From positions 62,001-126,000 of the IMG/VR virus record IMGVR_UViG_3300042473_001265: DNA of 64,000 nt; one strand, given 5' to 3'. Positions 39,006 to 45,682 of this stretch are shown here, piece by piece (the first letter of the stretch is position 1; each line of letters begins with the position of its first letter). The position numbers and the translations under genes were made by a program. A model generated the notes under the pieces. That model was not told the DNA's origin. It worked only from the letters and a program-made list of their open reading frames with translations, and searched no databases.

Positions 39006-39095
39006 GGAAGCGTGGCAGAGTCCGGTTTATTGCAGCAGTCTTGAAAACTGCCGGCTCGAAAGGGTCCGTGAGTTCGAATCTCACCGCTTCCACCA
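39006..39095 (+). tRNA. tRNA-Ser(TGA)
   Basis: Cloverleaf with long variable arm, loop CTTGAAA, encoded CCA. Confidence 0.95.
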
Positions 39096-39104
39096 ATGCA
39101 ATTT

Positions 39105-39179
39105 GCGGCCATAGTATAACGGATAATACAGCGGTCTTCTACACCGTGAATGTGGGTTCGATTCCTGCTGGCCGCGCCA
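39105..39179 (+). tRNA. tRNA-Arg(TCT)
   Basis: Loop CTTCTAC, T-loop GGTTCGATTCC, CCA. Confidence 0.93.
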
Positions 39180-39184
39180 AACAT

Positions 39185-39270
39185 GCCCCCATAGACAAAT
39201 TGGTAAAGTCACTCTCCTCAAAAGGGAGTATTTTAAAAAAATCTGAGTTCGAATCTCAGTGGGGGCACCA
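39185..39270 (+). tRNA. tRNA-Leu(CAA)
   Basis: Loop CTCAAAA, AT-rich variable arm, CCA. Confidence 0.9.
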
Positions 39271-39311
39271 ATGGTTGACAAAGATCAACAAACAAGTTAT
39301 AATAGAACAAT

Positions 39312-39398
39312 GCTCTGATGGTGAAATAGGTAGACACAAGAGACTTAAAATCTCTCGCTCGCAAGGGTGTGCCGGTTCGATTCCGGCTCGGAGCACCA
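39312..39398 (+). tRNA. tRNA-Leu(TAA)
   Basis: Loop CTTAAAA, long variable arm, CCA. Confidence 0.95.
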
Positions 39399-39441
39399 TT
39401 TAAATAAGTCAGTTAATCAAGTTAAATTAAAGAAAGCAATC

Positions 39442-39615
39442 ATGACCCCAACAAAAACTTTTAAGTTCAGCAAGCGCAACAAAACATTGATGACCTTGCT
39501 GCCATTCAAAGATCAAACCATACGCAATGCGTTCAAGCGCATGATGGTTGATGCACAGCTATGCAGCGGTGTTGTTGTCAAAAGCAGCAAGGATCGTGGC
39601 ACAGATAGCAAGTAA
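39442..39615 (+). CDS. small basic hypothetical protein within the tRNA block
   Basis: 57-aa ORF MTPTKTFKFSKRNK... between two Leu tRNAs. Confidence 0.55.
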   Translation: MTPTKTFKFSKRNKTLMTLLPFKDQTIRNAFKRMMVDAQLCSGVVVKSSKDRGTDSK

Positions 39616-39623
39616 AGATATAT

Positions 39624-39700
39624 GCCCTGGTGGTGAAATTGGTAGACACAGCGGTCTTAGAAGCCGTAAGCTGAGAGTTCGAGTCTCTCCTAGGGCACCA
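39624..39700 (+). tRNA. tRNA-Leu(TAG)
   Basis: Loop CTTAGAA, short variable arm, CCA. Confidence 0.9.
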
Positions 39701-39722
39701 AGTATATAAAAGCAATCACACT

Positions 39723-40196
39723 ATGCCAAAATGTTATCAACTGATCGGAGTGCCTGCATCGGGCAAAACCACTTGGTACCGTAACCAAGAGTGGTTGGGT
39801 GAAGATAAAAAAGATCACAAGTATGTGTCCACAGATCAGCATGTGGAAGGATATGCCAATGATCAAGGCAAAACCTACAGTGAAGTGTTTGAGGAATACA
39901 TGCCCACTGCTGTCAAACAGATGCTGATAAATGTTAACATGGCTGCGGCATATCAGTTAGATATTGTTTGGGATCAGACCAGCACCACAGTTAAAAGCCG
40001 TCGAAAGAAGTTTGTTGAGTTGCCCAACTATGAGCACATTGCTGTGGTATTTCGGACACCCGATGCACCGGAACATGCTCGCAGATTAAACAGTCGTCCG
40101 GGCAAGCACATTCCTGATGAAATAGTACAAGATATGATCATCAAATTTGAAATGCCTACCGAAGAAGAAGGGTTTGTTGAAATCTGGCATGTGTAA
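39723..40196 (+). CDS. P-loop kinase (AAA_33 / polynucleotide-kinase-like)
   Basis: LIGVPASGKTT and IVWDQTS..R motifs. Confidence 0.85.
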   Translation: MPKCYQLIGVPASGKTTWYRNQEWLGEDKKDHKYVSTDQHVEGYANDQGKTYSEVFEEYMPTAVKQMLINVNMAAAYQLDIVWDQTSTTVKSRRKKFVELPNYEHIAVVFRTPDAPEHARRLNSRPGKHIPDEIVQDMIIKFEMPTEEEGFVEIWHV

Positions 40197-40203
40197 TACT
40201 GGG

Positions 40204-40689
40204 TTAGGCTCTGGATAGCATTACCAGGCTGAGAAAAAATGCCGGAATTGCAATGGCCACAAAACAAGAAAACACAAGAAATGTTTGTAATATGTCTTCT
40301 TGTGCTTTGCGATTGGCTGCTGCCATTTTTCTTTCAACTTCTGCTCGTTCTTTGTACATACGCACTCGCTCGGACTGCATTTGATCCCAGACATCTTTGT
40401 TGCCGGACCAGATCAGCATTTCTTTAAGTTCTTTTTCAGCGTCCCGCAGTGCTTTGCTGTGCATGGCAGTTTGCAAAGATCTTGAAGCAATTTCTCCATT
40501 GCTCAGCAAAGAAGTAGAATTCATCAGCTTGACATTGGCCACATAAACTTTGTCGCAATTTTGAAAAAATGAACTAAACTGTCCGTATAAGCTGTTGATG
40601 TCTTTGCCCATGGCAATGGCTTTTTTAATGCCGCCAATTGCTTGCTGTGCCGCAGTGAATGCCAGGCCAATTGTCACAGGGTCAATCAT
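40204..40689 (-). CDS. hypothetical protein with hydrophobic termini
   Basis: 161-aa ORF MIDPVTIGLAF..., coupled to 40686-40880. Confidence 0.6.
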   Translation of the reverse strand: MIDPVTIGLAFTAAQQAIGGIKKAIAMGKDINSLYGQFSSFFQNCDKVYVANVKLMNSTSLLSNGEIASRSLQTAMHSKALRDAEKELKEMLIWSGNKDVWDQMQSERVRMYKERAEVERKMAAANRKAQEDILQTFLVFSCFVAIAIPAFFLSLVMLSRA

Positions 40690-40880
40690 GATCGTAGAAT
40701 ATAAGGTTTAAATTGCTTTTCCCAGCGTCGACACCAAACTTCTCTATTGGGAGCTTGGCCCGACCAACTCCACAGTGTACACACCCATTGTTCATTCTTG
40801 TCTAATTTTTCCGTTGGTGGTGCCACAGCATTTAATGCTGTAGAGCCTGCCAACAACACAAACAACAAAGAATATTTCAT
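40686..40880 (-). CDS. small secreted hypothetical protein
   Basis: Signal-peptide-like N-terminus and a WVCTLWSW..WCRRW motif. Confidence 0.55.
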   Translation of the reverse strand: MKYSLLFVLLAGSTALNAVAPPTEKLDKNEQWVCTLWSWSGQAPNREVWCRRWEKQFKPYILRS

Positions 40881-40926
40881 TTACTATATTTAACTATAGT
40901 ACGATATAATTACAACAGCCGTTTGA

Positions 40927-40955
40927 TTGACTGCAAAGCCACAATCTGCTATAAT
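40927..40955 (+). promoter_or_regulatory. sigma70-type promoter
   Basis: TTGACT-N17-TATAAT before the phosphoesterase gene. Confidence 0.7.
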
Positions 40956-40986
40956 ATAGGTTACAACGCAAGAAAAGGAGGGCAAG

Positions 40987-41589
40987 ATGCCTAGTGTATT
41001 TTTAGTCAGCGACACGCACTTTGGACACATGGGTGTATGCCGCTTTACCCGCAACGATGGTGTCACCAAATTACGCCCGTGGGATAGTGCTGAGGAAATG
41101 GACGAAGCCATGGTCACGGCCTGGAACAAACGAGTTAAACCCACGGACAAGGTATATCACTTGGGTGATGTGGTTATAAACCGCAAAGCATTAAAGACTC
41201 TGGCCAGATTGAACGGCGACAAGGTGTTAATCCGTGGCAACCATGATATCTTCCGTGATGAAGAGTATCGTGAATACTTTCGTGAATTACGGGCGTACCA
41301 TGTGATGAACGGCATGATCCTTAGCCACATTCCTGTACACAGTGACAGCTTGGGGCGTTTTGGCGTCAACATACACGGACATACTCACGCAAATCGTGTA
41401 CGCAAAGCCCGTGGAGTTGATGCTAGAACTGGTGAAATCTTGTACAGCGACGAGATTGATCCACGCTATCATTGTGTATGCGTGGAACAGACTGACTTTG
41501 CACCGATACTGTTTGAAGATGTGATCAAACGCATCGAAGCAGAAGGTGGGTCAGTGGGTTTTCGTAACGGCAATGGTCCTACAATGTAG
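40987..41589 (+). CDS. calcineurin-like metallophosphoesterase
   Basis: SDTHFGH, HLGDVV, IRGNHD, LSHIP and HGHTH motifs. Confidence 0.92.
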   Translation: MPSVFLVSDTHFGHMGVCRFTRNDGVTKLRPWDSAEEMDEAMVTAWNKRVKPTDKVYHLGDVVINRKALKTLARLNGDKVLIRGNHDIFRDEEYREYFRELRAYHVMNGMILSHIPVHSDSLGRFGVNIHGHTHANRVRKARGVDARTGEILYSDEIDPRYHCVCVEQTDFAPILFEDVIKRIEAEGGSVGFRNGNGPTM

Positions 41590-41604
41590 GCCTGGAATTT
41601 TAAA

Positions 41605-41682
41605 GTAGCGGTGGCAGAGAGGCCCAATGCAAGGGATTGCAAATCCCTAAAACCGTGAGTTCGAATCTCACCCGCTACTCCA
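41605..41682 (+). tRNA. tRNA-Cys(GCA)
   Basis: Loop TTGCAAA, U73, CCA. Confidence 0.93.
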
Positions 41683-41803
41683 GTTAATTCACAGTTGAAT
41701 TTTAAAGAGTAAATAGAGTAGTCAGAGTGCAGGCTCTTTTTAAATCCTGCCTTTGTGTGGTACCGAGCAATGCTCCTGCTTGTATAAGCATCGGTACACT
41801 ATT

Positions 41804-41877
41804 GCGGGATTCGTAAAATGGTATTACCTTAGATTTCCAATCTAAAGTCGGGGGTTCGATTCCCCCATCCCGCTCCA
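41804..41877 (+). tRNA. tRNA-Gly(TCC)
   Basis: Loop TTTCCAA, U73, CCA. Confidence 0.93.
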
Positions 41878-41906
41878 GTTTTTATGTTGATCGATTTGAG
41901 AAAATT

Positions 41907-42407
41907 ATGCAAACCATTAATCTTGTAAAAGTAAAACAATTCATAGAAGCACAAGGCCCAATGACTCGCATCTATTTGGGTTGCGACAGCGAACGAATCC
42001 GAATCAACAACGAATGGTGGGCCGATTACACACTGGCCATTGTGGTGCATATCAACGGCAACAGCGGATGCAAGATATTTGGCGAAGTGTGCCGCGAGCG
42101 TGACTATGATCAAAAAACTGCACGGCCCAGCATGCGACTGATGAACGAAGTGTACAAAGTTTCTGACATGTATCATCGGCTGGGCGAAGTGCTGAACGGC
42201 CGAGAAGTGGAAGTACACTTGGACATCAATCCAGACGAACGCCACGGATCCAGCTGTGTGATTGCACAGGCCATTGGCTATATAAAAGGAACCTGCAACA
42301 TAACACCATTGGTCAAACCCGAAGCGTTTGCTGCCAGTTATGCTGCGGATCGCTTCAAAGGATTGGCCACTGCACGACATCGTGTTCGAGTCAATGAACG
42401 AGTTTAG
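41907..42407 (+). CDS. RNase H-like YkuK/DUF458 family protein
   Basis: IYLGCDS, RLMNEVYK, EVHLDIN and AASYAAD pattern. Confidence 0.75.
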   Translation: MQTINLVKVKQFIEAQGPMTRIYLGCDSERIRINNEWWADYTLAIVVHINGNSGCKIFGEVCRERDYDQKTARPSMRLMNEVYKVSDMYHRLGEVLNGREVEVHLDINPDERHGSSCVIAQAIGYIKGTCNITPLVKPEAFAASYAADRFKGLATARHRVRVNERV

Positions 42408-42494
42408 GAAGTGTGGCTGAGTGGCCTAAGGCAGCTGATTACTAATCAGTCATATCGCAAGGTATCGTGGGTTCGAATCCTACCACTTCCGCCA
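42407..42494 (+). tRNA. tRNA-Ser with the rare anticodon ACT
   Basis: Ser-type long variable arm and G73; stem GCTGA/TCAGT with loop TTACTAA; CCA. Confidence 0.85.
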
Positions 42495-42500
42495 ATGTTA

Positions 42501-42526
42501 AAAAGGCTACTTTGATAGCCTTTTTT
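42501..42526 (+). terminator. intrinsic terminator after tRNA-Ser(ACT)
   Basis: AAAAGGCTA-ctttga-TAGCCTTTTTT. Confidence 0.7.
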
Positions 42527-42561
42527 CTTGACTTTTAAACAAAAGGCATATATAATACACT

Positions 42562-42660
42562 ATGATTACGCAAATCACATTCACTGCTAACAACACGCCG
42601 GCCATCTATGAGATAGCCTATGAGCGTGATTGTCCCAGGGGTCTTTGCCATTGTAGTTAA
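42562..42660 (+). CDS. leader peptide 2 (32 aa) of a putative tRNA-operon attenuator
   Basis: MITQITFTANNTPAIYEIAYERDCPRGLCHCS; TATAAT at 42549 suggests a near-leaderless start. Confidence 0.7.
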   Translation: MITQITFTANNTPAIYEIAYERDCPRGLCHCS

Positions 42661-42682
42661 CAAAAGTACTACATTCACAAAG

Positions 42683-42707
42683 ACCCGCTAACTAGGCGGG
42701 TTTTTTT
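42683..42707 (+). terminator. attenuator terminator 2
   Basis: ACCCGC-taactag-GCGGGT plus T6; GGGTCTTTG (42639) pairs perfectly with CAAAGACCC (42678), which overlaps the stem. Confidence 0.8.
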
Positions 42708-42717
42708 ATGGCGCTGG

Positions 42718-42746
42718 TAGACACAAAATCGCATCAGTGCTATAAT
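42718..42746 (+). promoter_or_regulatory. sigma70-type promoter of tRNA block 2
   Basis: TAGACA-N17-TATAAT. Confidence 0.65.
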
Positions 42747-42760
42747 ACACACATAACAGC

Positions 42761-42801
42761 AGCAAACGATCGAGTAGCTGAAGAGAATTCTTTAAAAATT
42801 T
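42761..42801 (+). promoter_or_regulatory. boxB-like hairpin plus boxA-like element
   Basis: AGC-AAACGATCGAGTA-GCT, then TTCTTTAAAAATTT resembling rrn boxA (TGCTCTTTAACAATTT). Confidence 0.55.
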
Positions 42802-42830
42802 ACTAATATTTTTTCTTGCTACGGCAAGAA

Positions 42831-42964
42831 ATTATATTGAAACACATTTTCAATCTGAATTGACAGATACAAACAACCAAGGGGAGCCGCTGGACTTGAG
42901 CCAGGTTCATCCTGAATTGACAGGAACAAGGTTGTAAGGGGAGCCGAGTGCGTTTCAATATAAT
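42831..42964 (+). ncRNA. inverted-repeat-bounded RNA cassette with an internal direct repeat
   Basis: ATTATATTGAAACAC...GCGTTTCAATATAAT arms; two CTGAATTGACAG...AAGGGGAGCCG units inside. Confidence 0.55.
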
Positions 42965-42970
42965 AAATTT

Positions 42971-43045
42971 GGAGCATTCGTCTATCGGTTAGGACAGTGG
43001 GTTTTCAGTCCACTAAGAGCGGTTCGACTCCGCTATGCTCTACCA
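42971..43045 (+). tRNA. tRNA-Glu(TTC)
   Basis: Loop TTTTCAG, CCA. Confidence 0.92.
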
Positions 43046-43052
43046 TGTTTTT

Positions 43053-43139
43053 GGATGTGTAGGAAAATTGGTAACCCCAGGAGACTGTAAATCTTCCGTC
43101 GTAATGGCATTGTTGGTTCAAGTCCAACCTCATCCACCA
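43053..43139 (+). tRNA. tRNA-Tyr(GTA)
   Basis: Loop CTGTAAA, variable arm, CCA. Confidence 0.93.
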
Positions 43140-43142
43140 AAT

Positions 43143-43370
43143 ATTTCTCGTCAGAGCCCTAATGCAAATCCTGTGGGCGATGAATTAACAAGGCTGCATA
43201 GATGCTTGCAGTATATTGTCGGTGAAGTTCCGACCGGGAAACGAAATCAAGTGGAAAGCAAGAGCCACAAAGTAAACACCGCCGGGTCAGAAAATGTGTC
43301 CGGGACGTATGGGTCGCGCAGCCTATACAAACAACGGTGGGGTAAGAGTCCTCATAACATTTTCACAAAT
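43143..43370 (+). ncRNA. unidentified multi-hairpin RNA candidate
   Basis: Hairpins GCCC/GGGC, CTGCA/TGCAG, GTCGG/CCGAC, GTGG/CCAC and CACCG/CGGTG between two tRNAs. Confidence 0.4.
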
Positions 43371-43373
43371 TTA

Positions 43374-43448
43374 GGTGCGTTCATATAACGGTCATTATCC
43401 TGGATTGTCTATCCAGAGACGGGAGTTCGACTCTCCCACGCATCGCCA
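43374..43448 (+). tRNA. tRNA-Asp(GTC)
   Basis: Loop TTGTCTA, G73, CCA. Confidence 0.92.
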
Positions 43449-43456
43449 AGTTAACA

Positions 43457-43533
43457 GGCCCTTAGCTCATGTTGGTTAGAGCAGCAGACTCATAATCTGT
43501 TGGTGCTGTGTTCGACTCACAGAGGGCCTACCA
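43457..43533 (+). tRNA. tRNA(CAT), probably Ile2 (lysidine type)
   Basis: Loop CTCATAA; GGCCCTT acceptor resembles E. coli ileX. Confidence 0.8.
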
Positions 43534-43539
43534 AGTTTT

Positions 43540-43712
43540 GGTTAGTTGGAAATGAAAGTAACCCAAAGGGAGCGCTCTGAACAGGCGCTGCTTAGTACGC
43601 CTTACAAAAGTAATTGTCCTGACTGTTCGACCCAAGAGGTGTTTACCCGTAGATTAAGTTCCTACGCTCTCGCTCAAGGGATGTCGCTGTGTCGCAACAG
43701 CACTAACCACCA
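43540..43712 (+). ncRNA. 173-nt RNA with a tRNA-like acceptor stem, T-like arm and ACCA end
   Basis: GGTTAGT/ACTAACC 7-bp stem plus A-CCA; GCTGT-gtcgca-ACAGC hairpin directly before the 3' strand. Confidence 0.5.
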
Positions 43713-43777
43713 AGTTTAAGAGTTCGTCTAGAAACCGGTAAATTGTAGTTTGGTCTACAAGCTCTTAATTAGTTTAT

Positions 43778-43870
43778 GGTGTCATAGGATGTAACGGGGT
43801 GCGGTTTGCCTCAACCTTGAATGATCATCAAGGTTTTCTTGCGTGGGTTCGAATCCCACATGATGCCCCA
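43778..43870 (+). tRNA. atypical tRNA-like RNA with a non-canonical core
   Basis: GGTGTCA/TGATGCC acceptor, canonical T arm GTGGG-TTCGAAT-CCCAC and CCA; central 8-bp AACCTTGA/TCAAGGTT hairpin. Confidence 0.55.
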
Positions 43871-43941
43871 AATTTGCAGTTTTTGTCTGGAGTAATATTC
43901 CTGGACACGGATAAAAACAGAAATGTTCTGCGCCAAGTTAT

Positions 43942-44011
43942 GCCCTGGACTGTGTTGCGAGTCAGATTTGAAGCTGAACGTAGACAGGTTTAATTCCTGT
44001 TAGGGGCGCCA
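43942..44011 (+). tRNA. degenerate tRNA with a reduced D arm, identity unclear
   Basis: T arm ACAGG-TTTAATT-CCTGT, GCCA end, imperfect acceptor and anticodon arms. Confidence 0.4.
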
Positions 44012-44014
44012 AGT

Positions 44015-44238
44015 TTTGTTAGAGTGTTAGCAAGAGAAAGTCACGCTGTCTAGGTTTCTTCGAAGGACCAAAACAGTAGAAGGTTGCGGGTTCGATGCCC
44101 GGCTGATCGCTTGAGTGGGATCGGCATACATGACGGCGTATCAACTGGACCGGTATCCCAAGTAACTTACCGACTCCCGCTCGAGCTTGTTAATTCGGGT
44201 GAATGGCAGCAATAACGTGGTGCTGCTACTCTAACAAA
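44015..44238 (+). ncRNA. 224-nt structured RNA candidate closed by an 11-bp stem
   Basis: TTTGTTAGAGT/ACTCTAACAAA; internal hairpins and a T-loop-like GGGTTCGATGCCC. Confidence 0.45.
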
Positions 44239-44246
44239 TTCAATAT

Positions 44247-44336
44247 GCCAGCGAGACTTGGAGTCCGAGGGGTCTTATATGCCCTTTCCGCCAGATTAGC
44301 GGCTTTGAGAGAGTTCGATTCTCTCCGCTGGTACCA
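44247..44336 (+). tRNA. tRNA with anticodon TAT (nominal Ile), long variable arm and minimal D loop
   Basis: GCCAGCG/CGCTGGT-A-CCA; loop CTTATAT; CCGC/GCGG variable arm; D arm GACT-tgg-AGTC. Confidence 0.75.
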
Positions 44337-44378
44337 GATCGTGTTGGATAAACTTTTTATCAGTTTATCCAAAACAAT

Positions 44379-44407
44379 TTGACAAGCAAAGATGTTTGTC
44401 ATACAAT
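44379..44407 (+). promoter_or_regulatory. sigma70-type promoter with a palindromic spacer
   Basis: TTGACA-N17-TACAAT; TGACAAGCA/TGTTTGTCA inverted repeat. Confidence 0.7.
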
Positions 44408-44420
44408 AGATACTTACTTG

Positions 44421-44526
44421 ATATTGTTGAGCACATTAGCCTGACTGAAACGGGCATCGAGTACGTGGGGCGTGAAAGAAGGTTCGATTCCTTCATACTC
44501 AATTTCAGTGGTGTGTTCAACAATAT
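44421..44526 (+). ncRNA. inverted-repeat-bounded RNA cassette with a T-arm-like hairpin
   Basis: ATATTGTTGAGCACATT...GGTGTGTTCAACAATAT; internal GAAGG-TTCGATT-CCTTC. Confidence 0.55.
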
Positions 44527-44547
44527 AAAGTTTGGTAAAATTAGGTG

Positions 44548-44576
44548 TTGACAAGTTCAACAGTTGATGTTACAAT
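44548..44576 (+). promoter_or_regulatory. sigma70-type promoter of the large ncRNA
   Basis: TTGACA-N17-TACAAT. Confidence 0.75.
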
Positions 44577-44582
44577 AAGATT

Positions 44583-45476
44583 CCGGGGCAGTTTAATGTC
44601 CTACTAGGCAGCTTGCTGTCTAGTGAAGAATAACTGTGGTGACACAGCCAAAGGAGGTATGCCTACATAACTCCGCCAGCAACGGTTCGTTTAGACAAGC
44701 CTGCTCAGACTCGCGAGAGTCCCTTCACTGATAAGACCGGTGGAGGTAACAATGACGCTGGATGTTGTGGAAAGAACGTCGGCTTACCGGCCCGCAAGGG
44801 TAACCGGAGCAGATGGAAAGTAACAGGTGGTGCTGACTTCACAACAAAACCAGTCCAGTTAATTGGCATGAGAAAGGGTAGTGTATCGGTCCGAGGGGTT
44901 GCACCCAAGGGCTTGTATGCAGTTTGAGTGGTCAGTGGAGGCTGTCGAAAGGCGGGGTCAACACAGATCGCAAAAGACGTCTGAGTAGTTCGCAAGACAA
45001 AAGGAACGTGGTGTGTTGTATTGTGTAGAGCAAAACTTTATGCAGCAACTGAGTCAGCACATCGCAGTAGGTTCGTTATAGCTCAATTGGTAGAGCAACT
45101 CCCTGTTAAGGAGTAGGCAGACGGTTCAAATCCATCTAACTATTAAAAAGCAAAGACTGACTCGGTCGTATGTGAAAAGCATCTAATACTTGGCTCGCAA
45201 GAGAATCAAGTCAGACGTAACTCGCAAGGTGAAATCTGTTTATGCAGGAAGTTTCGTAACTGTTTAGCGACAGTGAATGGCTCTAAAGGTCAACGGGATA
45301 GAAAGCGTAGAATAGCATATGGCGACAAGACTACTGCCTGTCTTTAAAAACGGCGATGCTGGCAACAGACCAGGAAACCTGCAAGGGTCTTGGTGGAAGT
45401 CGGAAGAAAGCGGTCTCGCAAGGATCGTAATAATGTCCGAGGTGTTGTTGGGTAAGCATGTATTCTCAGTGCTCCA
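44583..45476 (+). ncRNA. large (about 0.9 kb) structured RNA, GOLLD-like
   Basis: No credible ORF; own promoter; many GCAA/GAAA tetraloop hairpins; tRNA-array location. The GAGTAG..GCAAG..AAAGGAACGTGGTGTGTTGTATT segment resembles GOLLD as I recall it. Confidence 0.6.
45072..45144 (+). pseudogene. degenerate tRNA-Asn(GTT) embedded in the large ncRNA
   Basis: D arm TAGCTCAATTGGTAGAGC, ACTCC-CTGTTAA-GGAGT and T-loop GGTTCAAATCC; broken acceptor stem, no CCA. Confidence 0.65.
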
Positions 45477-45477
45477 C

Positions 45478-45538
45478 TATTCTAAAACACATTAAGCTGA
45501 TGCGGGCTGCAATGCCGCAGATAGTGTGTTTCAGAATA
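45478..45538 (+). ncRNA. inverted-repeat-bounded RNA cassette
   Basis: TATTCTAAAACACATTA...TAGTGTGTTTCAGAATA. Confidence 0.55.
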
Positions 45539-45552
45539 GATAAATAAACTAC

Positions 45553-45628
45553 CGCGGGAAGGGTCCGGTCACCGGCAGGGTCTCATAAGCCTTCGCAATC
45601 CTTGGTTCAAATCCAAGTCCCGCTACCA
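45553..45628 (+). tRNA. tRNA(CAT), probably initiator fMet
   Basis: CGCGGGA/TCCCGCT with an unpaired first position; loop CTCATAA; CCA. Confidence 0.75.
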
Positions 45629-45646
45629 ATAACAAATCATCGGTGG

Positions 45647-45675
45647 TTGACACAGAATGATAAATAACATACAAT
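45647..45675 (+). promoter_or_regulatory. sigma70-type promoter (with embedded ATAAATA) for leader 3
   Basis: TTGACA-N17-TACAAT. Confidence 0.75.
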
Positions 45676-45682
45676 AGGATTT

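What the first reader, a model, noticed from the sequence alone, without database searches (positions are those of the whole stretch)
44548..45476. GOLLD-like giant RNA carrying a decayed tRNA-Asn domain
Seen: about 890 nt of tetraloop-rich non-coding sequence with its own promoter. At 45072-45144 it contains intact D, anticodon (GTT) and T arms but a broken acceptor stem, while an intact tRNA-Asn exists at 47554. Established: GOLLD RNAs are large phage-associated RNAs of unknown function found near tRNA genes. Inference: the embedded tRNA module has been kept as a structural or decoy domain.
Basis: partly seen in the sequence, partly recalled or inferred. Interest (0 to 1): 0.62.

Follow-up and report, generated by a model that had tools for sequence, protein, structure and literature searches.

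The report
Phage GOLLD RNA with tRNA mimic
This is a genuine, expressed ~895-nt GOLLD RNA of a lake jumbo phage. The tRNA-shaped piece in its middle is a conserved tRNA look-alike without a CCA end, not a rotting gene; the arrangement is already known, but here it is documented across 79 variants.

Summary
Rfam's GOLLD model (RF02032) matches window 45008-45472 end to end at 197 bits (cut-off 150). Conservation across 70 homologues and contigs from four metatranscriptome studies both delimit one RNA of about 44585-45480, behind a TTGACA-N17-TACAAT promoter at 44548-44576.

The tRNA-Asn(GTT)-like element at 45072-45144 lies in the GOLLD linker. It has two acceptor mismatches, one T-stem mismatch, a T discriminator and no CCA. 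28 of the 29 other tRNAs in the window encode CCA.

"Decayed" is the wrong word. In 79 distinct relatives the same module sits at the same site. Its D, anticodon, T and inner four acceptor pairs are 98-100% paired, and 16 of 18 pairs show compensatory changes. The outer three acceptor pairs are 66% paired with none. CCA is absent in 79 of 79, against 97% of 1144 neighbouring tRNAs. The outer "acceptor" letters belong to the GOLLD linker, as a natural module-less variant (L008) shows.

So this is a selected, tethered, probably non-decoding tRNA mimic. By homology with solved GOLLD cages it faces the cage lumen. tRNAs in the GOLLD linker are already published, so this is a new member of a known kind. 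Its function remains inferred.

The parts
44548..44576 (+). Sigma-70-type promoter of the GOLLD gene (TTGACA, 17-nt spacer with TG, TACAAT)
   Evidence: 11 of 12 matches. The same promoter type precedes neighbouring small RNA genes at 44379 and 45647. A strict match lies 569-601 nt upstream of the linker motif in 18 of 70 homologues; the window's is 597 nt upstream.
44585..45480 (+). Whole GOLLD RNA, about 895 nt (ends approximate)
   Evidence: Conservation across 70 homologues starts at about 44585 and ends at about 45484. RNA-library contigs of 4 studies cover 44591/2-45480 only.
44585..45007 (+). GOLLD 5' domain (variable across the family, outside the Rfam model; conserved in this clade)
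   Evidence: 60-90% column identity over most of the domain, with two variable patches near 44605-44624 and 44945-44964. RNAalifold on 66 sequences gives 92 pairs, 56 with compensatory changes, 98.7% paired.
45008..45472 (+). GOLLD conserved 3' domain as modelled by Rfam RF02032, linker included
   Evidence: 197.4 bits, model 1-416, pseudoknot and hairpins aligned.
45064..45074 (+). Conserved linker leader (...GCAGTAGGTT, plus a bulged C in this copy). It supplies the 5' letters of the outer 'acceptor' pairs.
   Evidence: Nearly invariant in 79 sequences. It is also present in the module-less GOLLD L008.
45072..45144 (+). tRNA-Asn(GTT)-like module (Rfam/ARAGORN limits). The selected core is 45075-45140: inner 4 acceptor pairs, D arm, anticodon arm and T arm.
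   Evidence: for this copy. for covariation, loop conservation and absence of CCA in 79 homologues.
45145..45165 (+). Conserved A-rich linker trailer and start of the pseudoknot strand (AAAAAGCAAAGACTGACTCGG)
   Evidence: Aligned to the conserved 'AAAGCAAAAGUCU' of the Rfam consensus. This was the motif used to fetch 117 IMG/VR stretches.
45477..45539 (+). Long hairpin just after the GOLLD 3' end; possibly a 3'-end-forming or processing element (uncertain)
   Evidence: Together with the terminal GOLLD hairpin, the folded 101-nt stretch 45452-45552 gives MFE -28.9 kcal/mol, z -3.5. It has no T-run, so no terminator was called. RNA contigs stop at 45480. It is partly conserved.
47554..47629 (+). 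Canonical tRNA-Asn(GTT) of the same phage (7/7 acceptor pairs, G73, encoded CCA); it makes the embedded module redundant for decoding

Best explanation
The locus is a bona fide GOLLD RNA gene of an uncultivated 340-kb lake-water jumbo phage. It sits inside the phage's array of about 30 tRNA genes.

Shown:
- One RNA of about 895 nt is made from its own sigma-70-like promoter.
- It has a structured 5' domain, the conserved GOLLD 3' domain, and a linker that carries a 73-nt tRNA-shaped module.

Inferred from the solved GOLLD structures:
- The RNA assembles into a 12-14-mer cage whose linkers point into the lumen.
- 12-14 tRNA-shaped modules would therefore be tethered inside.

Shown by comparison:
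- The module is kept by selection for its tRNA core: the elbow (D-loop GG, T-loop TTCRA), three arms, a 7-nt anticodon loop with U33, U36, A37 and A38, and the inner four acceptor pairs.
- It lacks what a decoding tRNA needs: a regular 7-bp acceptor end, the G73 of the tRNA-Asn genes in these phages, and the encoded CCA that nearly all tRNA genes in these phages carry.

Most likely mechanism (inferred): the module is not released as a working tRNA. It acts as a covalently tethered tRNA mimic, a multivalent bait that the cage presents to, or hides from, a tRNA-recognising partner during infection. Candidate partners are a host tRNA nuclease or tRNA-modifying enzyme, RNase P, or the ribosome.

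My odds:
- GOLLD identity: about 0.97.
- Selected, non-decoding tRNA mimic: about 0.7.
- Bait for a protein or ribosome partner: about 0.3.
For: Identity and extent:
- RF02032 matches at 197.4 bits over the full model, as a single copy in the genome.
- Homologous GOLLDs with a tRNA-like element at the same linker site occur in Sinorhizobium phage Phosso and Phaeobacter phage MD18.
- The RNA limits agree between conservation, the promoter and RNA-library contigs from 4 studies that leave the flanks empty.
- The 5' domain covaries: 56 of 92 pairs.

Continuity of the transcript:
- The X15 contig 45045-45233 has 0 differences and spans the module.
- Contigs of relatives run from the preceding GOLLD hairpin straight into other module variants.

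Selection on the module (79 distinct sequences):
- Inner acceptor, D, anticodon and T helices are 98.1, 99.7, 100 and 97.7% paired.
- 16 of these 18 pairs have changes on both sides. The covariation score is 0.645 against 0.200 in shuffles (0 of 500 reach it) and at most 0.124 when the partners are slid.
- U33, U36, A37, A38, the D-loop GG and the T-loop TTC-A are nearly invariant.

Not an ordinary tRNA:
- The outer three acceptor pairs are 66% paired with no compensatory change, against about 50% expected from the trailer's own composition.
- In the strict register only 8 of 79 have 7 of 7 pairs.
- CCA follows 0 of 79 modules and 0 of 60 ARAGORN-called ones, against 97.1% of 1144 other tRNAs in the same loci. 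Those tRNAs are 93-98% paired at pairs 1-3.
- In the window, 28 of 29 other tRNAs encode CCA.
- Canonical tRNA-Asn in these loci is G73+CCA in 30 of 34, while 1 of 30 embedded Asn-like modules has G.
- The same module body carries G, C or T at position 34 (L073, L023, L101).
- A canonical tRNA with the same anticodon is present in 10 of the 11 loci that have at least 25 tRNAs.
- The phage encodes no CCA-adding enzyme.
- L008, a GOLLD of the same clade, lacks exactly the module core and joins leader GGTT to trailer GAT-AAAAA.

Cage and inward-facing linker: Kretsch et al. 2025 (PMC12286853) and the review PMC12990946.
Against: - No processing, charging or binding experiment exists for this RNA. 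Only assembled contigs of the RNA runs could be read, so 5' or 3' ends at the module borders (RNase P/Z cuts) could not be looked for.
- Two X17 contigs skip 45073-45144/6, with what lies between unknown. They most likely carry a divergent module, but they could be module-less or processed forms.
- The module scores as well on the tRNA model (54.7 bits) as several real tRNAs of this phage, and ARAGORN accepts 60 of the modules.
- Host CCA-adding enzymes could add CCA. Outer acceptor complementarity is above chance (66% against 50%), so a weak helix may form.
- The conserved anticodon loop could equally mean that decoding matters.
- Single-sequence folding does not recover the cloverleaf (z -0.28).
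- Cage formation by this particular GOLLD is assumed from homologues.
Confidence: 0.6

Rival explanations
1. Stored pro-tRNA, or tRNA punctuation. The module is a real tRNA-Asn precursor parked in the GOLLD linker (the 'inhibited storage' idea of PMC12990946). At some stage RNase P and RNase Z release it, the host enzyme adds CCA, and it decodes AAY. The cuts would also separate the 5' and 3' GOLLD domains.
For: - The tRNA model scores 54.7 bits and ARAGORN calls it.
- The elbow and a 7-nt anticodon loop with U33, A37 and A38 are conserved.
- Outer acceptor complementarity is somewhat above chance.
- The idea is published for the Mycolicibacterium GOLLD tRNA-Phe.
- The 5' and 3' domains are separate bodies in the solved cage.
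- Two X17 contigs skip exactly the module (ambiguous).
Against: - CCA follows 0 of 79 modules against 97% of neighbouring tRNAs.
- The discriminator is not the G73 seen in 30 of 34 canonical tRNA-Asn genes of these phages.
- Pairs 1-3 show no compensatory change, and in 5' strands with a bulged C or CA the strict register fails.
- G, C or T at position 34 occurs on the same body.
- A canonical copy with the same anticodon is usually present (window 47554).
- The phage has no CCA-adding enzyme.
- An RNA contig is continuous across the module.
- In M. aubagnense no separate product of the embedded pseudo-tRNA was detected (PMC6582537).
Confidence: 0.2
2. Purely architectural module. The tRNA fold is a compact, stable spacer or folding nucleus for the linker. 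It helps the two GOLLD domains or the cage assemble and has no outside binding partner.
For: - Selection acts on the fold, not the acceptor end.
- The linker joins two separately folded domains.
- Anticodon identity drifts.
Against: - The solved env-38 and S. agalactiae GOLLD cages assemble with short, disordered, tRNA-free linkers, and L008 does without the module. So the module is not needed for assembly.
- Near-invariance of the single-stranded loop letters U33, U36, A37, A38 and of the elbow letters suggests that something reads them.
Confidence: 0.15
3. Neutral relic. A tRNA gene once landed in the linker and is now decaying (the literal reading of 'decayed tRNA').
For: This copy has three stem mismatches and no CCA.
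Against: - 79 distinct variants keep 98-100% pairing in four helices through compensatory changes in 16 of 18 pairs.
- A neutral relic would lose its stems at the rate at which the surrounding variable linker diverges.
Confidence: 0.03

Closest known systems
GOLLD RNA family (Rfam RF02032; env-38 14-mer cage, PDB 9MEE; S. agalactiae 12-mer, 9L0R)
   Same: Full-length match to the family model above its cut-off. More than 800 nt, with a conserved 3' domain and a separate 5' domain. Encoded by a phage, within a tRNA array. Lake origin.
   Different: The linker carries a 73-nt tRNA-like module, whereas env-38 has a 42-nt disordered linker. Multimerisation was not tested for this sequence.
[quoted passage not shown]
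   Same: A tRNA-shaped element in the same linker. In M. aubagnense it was judged a pseudo-tRNA with no separate product.
   Different: Different host range (lake jumbo phages) and a different anticodom set: mostly GTT, then TTT, CTT and TCT. In the papers I could read I found no family-wide account of the missing CCA, the truncated acceptor or the covariation. I could not read Morgado 2020 or Weinberg 2009 themselves.
GOLLDs of Sinorhizobium phage Phosso (PV764938.1) and Phaeobacter phage MD18 (MT270409.1)
   Same: RF02032 at 186.6 and 169.6 bits, with a tRNA-like element at the same linker site. MD18's GOLLD is also followed by a permuted tmRNA.
   Different: Anticodon TCT (Arg-like). Only 52-55% identical overall. 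The Phosso GOLLD is not annotated, and MD18's module is annotated as an ordinary tRNA-Arg.
Other tethered tRNA mimics: the tmRNA tRNA-like domain; plant-virus 3' tRNA-like structures (from general knowledge, not tested here)
   Same: A tRNA-shaped fold embedded in a larger RNA and used for recognition by the tRNA machinery.
   Different: Those mimics keep a chargeable CCA end and lack an anticodon arm. This module is the reverse: a full anticodon arm and elbow, but no usable acceptor end.

Membership tests
GOLLD RNA (RF02032) | Covariance-model score above the curated gathering score over the whole model, pseudoknot included | tested here: met
   197.4 bits against 150, model 1-416, E 3.5e-54. 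Confirmed in the whole genome.
GOLLD RNA (RF02032) | Giant size (about 800 nt or more), with a structured, less conserved 5' domain ahead of the conserved 3' domain | tested here: met
   About 895 nt by conservation and RNA contigs. The 5' domain has 92 pairs, 56 of them compensatory.
GOLLD RNA (RF02032) | Phage or prophage location, near tRNA genes | tested here: met
   340-kb virus record. 30 tRNA genes and a tmRNA lie at 39006-49767 around it.
GOLLD RNA (RF02032) | Expressed as a non-coding RNA | tested here: met
   Contigs of 4 metatranscriptome studies cover exactly the RNA and not its flanks. The internal ORFs have no Pfam match. Neither level nor strand can be read from contigs.
GOLLD RNA (RF02032) | Homo-oligomeric nanocage with an inward-facing linker | not testable with these tools
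   Known for env-38 and S. agalactiae GOLLD. Assumed here by homology.
Canonical (decoding) tRNA-Asn | Cloverleaf with D, anticodon and T arms and GTT in a 7-nt loop | tested here: met
   Rfam tRNA 54.7 bits; ARAGORN Asn(GTT). One C.A mismatch in the T stem.
Canonical (decoding) tRNA-Asn | Regular 7-bp acceptor stem maintained by covariation | tested here: not met
   This copy has 5 of 7 pairs (T.T at 1:72, C.T at 3:70). In the clade, pairs 1-3 are 66% paired with no compensatory change, and 8 of 79 have 7 of 7. Neighbouring tRNAs are 93-98% paired there.
Canonical (decoding) tRNA-Asn | 3' CCA (encoded in the tRNA genes of these phages) | tested here: not met
   The tail is AAAAAG. CCA follows 0 of 79 modules, 97.1% of 1144 neighbouring tRNAs and 28 of 29 in the window. 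No phage CCA-adding enzyme. Addition by a host enzyme was not excluded.
Canonical (decoding) tRNA-Asn | Discriminator G73, as in the canonical tRNA-Asn genes of these phages | tested here: not met
   T in the window. Canonical Asn genes have G73 in 31 of 34; embedded Asn-like modules have G in 1 of 30.
Canonical (decoding) tRNA-Asn | Release by RNase P/Z and aminoacylation | not testable with these tools
   Only contigs of the RNA runs were available, with no read ends.

The most novel reading that the evidence does not exclude
GOLLD cages of lake jumbo phages may be multivalent tRNA-decoy devices. Each cage would hold 12-14 uncharged tRNA mimics that cannot be released. Their anticodon loops (NUU or UCU with invariant U33, U36, A37, A38) would titrate or trap a host factor that reads that loop, for example an anticodon-loop nuclease of a defence system.

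The anticodon set (GUU 42, UUU 16, CUU 6, UCU 6, UGU 1 of 77) overlaps the published targets of PARIS AriB: Lys-UUU, Thr-UGU and Asn-GUU (PMC12409363).

Against this particular nuclease: position 39 of the modules is G or A (T in one variant, L072), not the U39 that AriB needs. The overlap may simply reflect descent from one ANN-decoding tRNA.
Probability: 0.15. Interest if true: 0.85.

Novelty: new member of a known kind. Interest (0 to 1): 0.45.

Why it matters
GOLLD is one of the largest bacterial or phage non-coding RNAs. It is now known to build RNA-only cages, yet it has no known function. The one clue to cargo is that some linkers carry tRNAs.

This locus and its 79 distinct relatives turn that remark into a defined object:
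- a tRNA core kept by covariation;
- systematically lacking CCA and a regular acceptor end;
- transcribed continuously with the cage RNA;
- abundant in lake metatranscriptomes;
- with a natural module-less control (L008).

That gives concrete experiments: processing and charging assays, module-dependent pull-downs, and cryo-EM of a tRNA-bearing GOLLD. These can separate "stored tRNA" from "tethered decoy".

For annotation, the 45072-45144 element and its counterparts (for example the "tRNA-Arg" of phage MD18) should not be counted as ordinary tRNA genes.

Tried and rejected
1. Chance or mis-called GOLLD: rejected by the full-length Rfam match.
2. Protein-coding reading: the 96-aa and 58-aa ORFs inside the span have no Pfam match, and the region covaries as RNA.
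3. Single-sequence folding of 45062-45156 does not give the cloverleaf (z -0.28). This is uninformative; the case rests on covariation.
4. No intrinsic terminator was found. The hairpin at 45477-45539 is only a candidate 3' element.
5. The phage genome has no hit for a CCA-adding enzyme, an RNA ligase or RtcB, so there is no sign of a phage-borne tRNA maturation or repair set.
6. Recent copying from the phage's own tRNA-Asn: by eye the two sequences differ throughout; I made no formal alignment.
7. AriB-decoy idea: the anticodon overlap is real, but the U39 determinant is absent. Kept only as the low-probability novel case.
8. The X17 joints that skip 70-72 nt at the module cannot be told apart from divergent modules; left open.
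9. Weinberg 2009 and Morgado 2020 are not held. Their content is cited only through papers that quote them.
10. L009 and L018 matched the search motif by chance and have no GOLLD; they were excluded.
11. The first full-length MAFFT run timed out and was redone with a faster setting.

Full report
**Setting**

The window is bases 62001-126000 of a 340,172-bp IMG/VR virus record, estimated 98% complete, so a jumbo phage. Near-identical DNA occurs in many lake-water metagenomes from different studies. The finding lies inside a dense array of RNA genes: 30 tRNA calls between 39006 and 49369 and a permuted tmRNA at 49393-49676.

Yes.
- Rfam's GOLLD model RF02032 matches 45008-45472 on the + strand over all 416 model positions. 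It scores 197.4 bits against a gathering score of 150, E 3.5e-54. It is the only copy in the genome.
- The Rfam model covers only the conserved 3' domain.
- A promoter-like site, TTGACA, 17 nt, TACAAT, lies at 44548-44576.
- In an alignment of 70 distinct homologues, column identity jumps from about 0.1-0.4 to 0.7-0.9 at about 44585. It falls again after about 45484.
- Independently, contigs from four metatranscriptome libraries of four studies cover 44591/2 to 45480. They leave 44222-44590 and 45481-45997 empty. DNA carry-over would not produce that pattern.
- The 5' 420 nt are structured RNA. RNAalifold on 66 sequences gives 92 pairs, 98.7% paired, 56 with compensatory changes.
- The two ORFs inside the span have no Pfam match.

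**The tRNA-like element in this copy**

- Rfam's tRNA model scores 45072-45144 at 54.7 bits, and ARAGORN calls tRNA-Asn(GTT).
- The D stem and anticodon stem are perfect. The T stem has a C.A middle pair. The acceptor has T.T at 1:72 and C.T at 3:70. The discriminator is T, and the following letters are AAAAAG, not CCA.
- Of the 29 other tRNA hits in the window, 28 have CCA directly after the discriminator and 6-7 of 7 acceptor pairs. These include the canonical tRNA-Asn at 47554, which has 7 of 7 pairs, G73 and CCA.
- The element sits in the single-stranded linker of the GOLLD model, positions about 63-140.

**Relatives**

- BLAST against phage records found two GOLLDs with a tRNA-like element at the same place. 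They are Sinorhizobium phage Phosso (186.6 bits, unannotated) and Phaeobacter phage MD18 (169.6 bits). Both have a TCT anticodon, and MD18's is annotated as tRNA-Arg.
- A pattern taken from the 3' edge of the linker fetched 117 IMG/VR stretches.
- Of the three outlying loci tested, two were chance hits without GOLLD and the third, L008, is a GOLLD.
- Nearly all the rest carry a tRNA-like module between a conserved leader (...AGCACATCGCAGTAGGTT) and the A-rich trailer.

**Selection on the module**

I aligned 79 distinct versions and counted a cloverleaf written from the window's copy.
- The inner four acceptor pairs, D stem, anticodon stem and T stem are 98.1, 99.7, 100 and 97.7% paired.
- 16 of these 18 pairs show changes on both sides.
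- The covariation score is 0.645, against 0.200 in shuffles (0 of 500 reach it). It is at most 0.124 when the partners are slid by 1-3 columns.
- The single-stranded letters that make a tRNA a tRNA are nearly invariant. These are the D-loop GG, the T-loop TTC-A, and U33, U36, A37 and A38 of a 7-nt anticodon loop.
- This is purifying selection on a tRNA-shaped fold, not decay.

**The acceptor end is never canonical**

- The three outer acceptor pairs are 66% paired, mostly G.U and U-A, with no compensatory change.
- From the trailer's own composition about 50% would be expected. In the strict tRNA register only 8 of 79 have seven pairs.
- None of the 79 has CCA within 8 nt of the inner stem.
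- As a control, ARAGORN found 1144 distinct other tRNAs in the same loci. Of these, 97.1% encode CCA, pairs 1-3 are 93-98% paired, and 85% have 7 of 7.
- Canonical tRNA-Asn genes there are G73+CCA in 30 of 34. Embedded Asn-like modules have G in 1 of 30.
- The 5' letters of the outer "pairs" are the fixed linker leader GGTT, sometimes followed by a bulged C (as in this window) or CA.
- L008, a GOLLD of the same clade (169 bits), has no module. Its linker reads leader GGTT directly joined to GAT-AAAAAGCAA.
- The selected unit is therefore the tRNA core down to acceptor pairs 4-7. The "broken" top of the stem is GOLLD linker.

**Anticodon and redundancy**

- Anticodons among the 77 modules with a 7-nt loop are GTT 42, TTT 16, TCT 6, CTT 6 and others 7.
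- The same body occurs with G, C or T at position 34 (L073, L023, L101). That is hard to reconcile with faithful charging.
- Where enough of the tRNA array was fetched, a canonical CCA-bearing tRNA with the same anticodon is usually present. This holds in 22 of 34 loci with at least 15 tRNAs and in 10 of 11 with at least 25. In the window it is at 47554.
- The phage has no detectable CCA-adding enzyme, RNA ligase or RtcB.

**Transcript continuity**

- One contig of RNA run X15, identical to the window, spans 45045-45233. It covers the whole module, with 27 nt before it and 89 nt after.
- Other RNA-run contigs match the GOLLD hairpin before the linker and then continue into module variants of relatives.
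- Contigs cannot show RNA ends or amounts, so partial processing is not excluded.
- Two X17 contigs skip exactly the module, with unknown letters between.

**What is known**

- GOLLD RNAs are phage or prophage RNAs near tRNA islands. They have a conserved 3' region and a variable 5' region, and they are induced during lysis.
- Env-38 GOLLD forms a 14-mer cage, and S. agalactiae GOLLD a 12-mer.
- The variable linker is disordered and faces the lumen. [quoted passage not shown]
- A 2026 review cites a tRNA-Phe in J13/15 of the Mycolicibacterium GOLLD and proposes "inhibited storage".
- In M. aubagnense the embedded gene was called a pseudo-tRNA, and no separate product was seen.
- The arrangement itself is therefore not new.
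- In the papers I could read I did not find the family-wide pattern shown here: a covarying core, a linker-derived pseudo-acceptor, universal lack of CCA against CCA-encoding neighbours, and a drifting position 34. The two primary papers could not be opened.

**Mechanism**

I take the module to be a tethered, non-decoding tRNA mimic, about 0.7. By homology it is displayed 12-14-fold in the cage lumen.

- *Bait.* The invariant loop and elbow letters argue that something reads it. A bait for a tRNA-binding host factor is my preferred function, about 0.3.
- *PARIS AriB.* Its targets Lys-UUU, Thr-UGU and Asn-GUU overlap the module anticodons. The modules, however, lack the U39 that AriB requires, so I keep that only as a lead.
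- *Pro-tRNA or punctuation.* About 0.2.
- *Purely architectural.* About 0.15. Solved cages and L008 assemble or exist without a module.
- *Neutral decay.* About 0.03. Contradicted.

**Verdict**

It is a new member of a known kind. It has moderate interest because it sharpens an open question with a testable object.

Noticed in passing
window 44020-44232 (+): An unknown RNA of about 215 nt just upstream of the GOLLD gene. It has no Rfam family even at E<=1, yet very high contig depth in three RNA runs. Homologues occur in 35 of the fetched GOLLD loci. The consensus fold of 18 distinct copies has 41 pairs, 19 with compensatory changes, and includes a T-arm-like hairpin. Possibly a new phage structured RNA.
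   Followed up: partly
window 44247-44336 and 45553-45628 (+): Odd tRNA-like genes, each behind its own TTGACA-N17-TACAAT promoter (44379, 45647). The first is called Ile(TAT) by ARAGORN, with a 3-bp D stem, a long variable arm and CCA; Rfam gives only a 23-bit tRNA-Sec match. The second is called Met(CAT) only at a relaxed ARAGORN threshold. Both are conserved in about a dozen related loci.
   Followed up: partly
window 47721-47788 (+): A second degenerate tRNA hit (32 bits, just over the cut-off). It has a broken acceptor stem and no CCA, and ARAGORN does not call it.
   Followed up: no
window 49393-49676 (+) (ARAGORN 49362-49767): A phage-encoded permuted (two-piece type) tmRNA with an unusually long predicted 29-aa tag ending LAV. 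GOLLD followed by a permuted tmRNA is also seen in Phaeobacter phage MD18 (L003) and in L016.
   Followed up: no
L008:5500-5897: A GOLLD of the same clade (169 bits) whose linker lacks the tRNA-like module exactly at the borders of the inner acceptor stem. It is a natural deletion or pre-insertion control.
   Followed up: partly
whole window tRNA array 39006-49369; genome G000: 28 of 29 other tRNA genes encode their own CCA. The 340-kb phage has no detectable CCA-adding enzyme (PF01743), RNA ligase (PF09414) or RtcB (PF01139).
   Followed up: yes
window 45680-45875 (+): A short transcription unit behind the promoter at 45647, ending in a stem followed by a T-run (…cccagggttttttta). It is conserved in L089 and partly in other loci, and nothing known matches it.
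   Followed up: no
L003 (Phaeobacter phage MD18) 2580-2653; L002 (Sinorhizobium phage Phosso) 2527-2995: Public annotation issues. MD18's GOLLD-embedded module is annotated as an ordinary tRNA-Arg and its GOLLD is not annotated. Phosso's GOLLD region has no annotation at all.
   Followed up: yes
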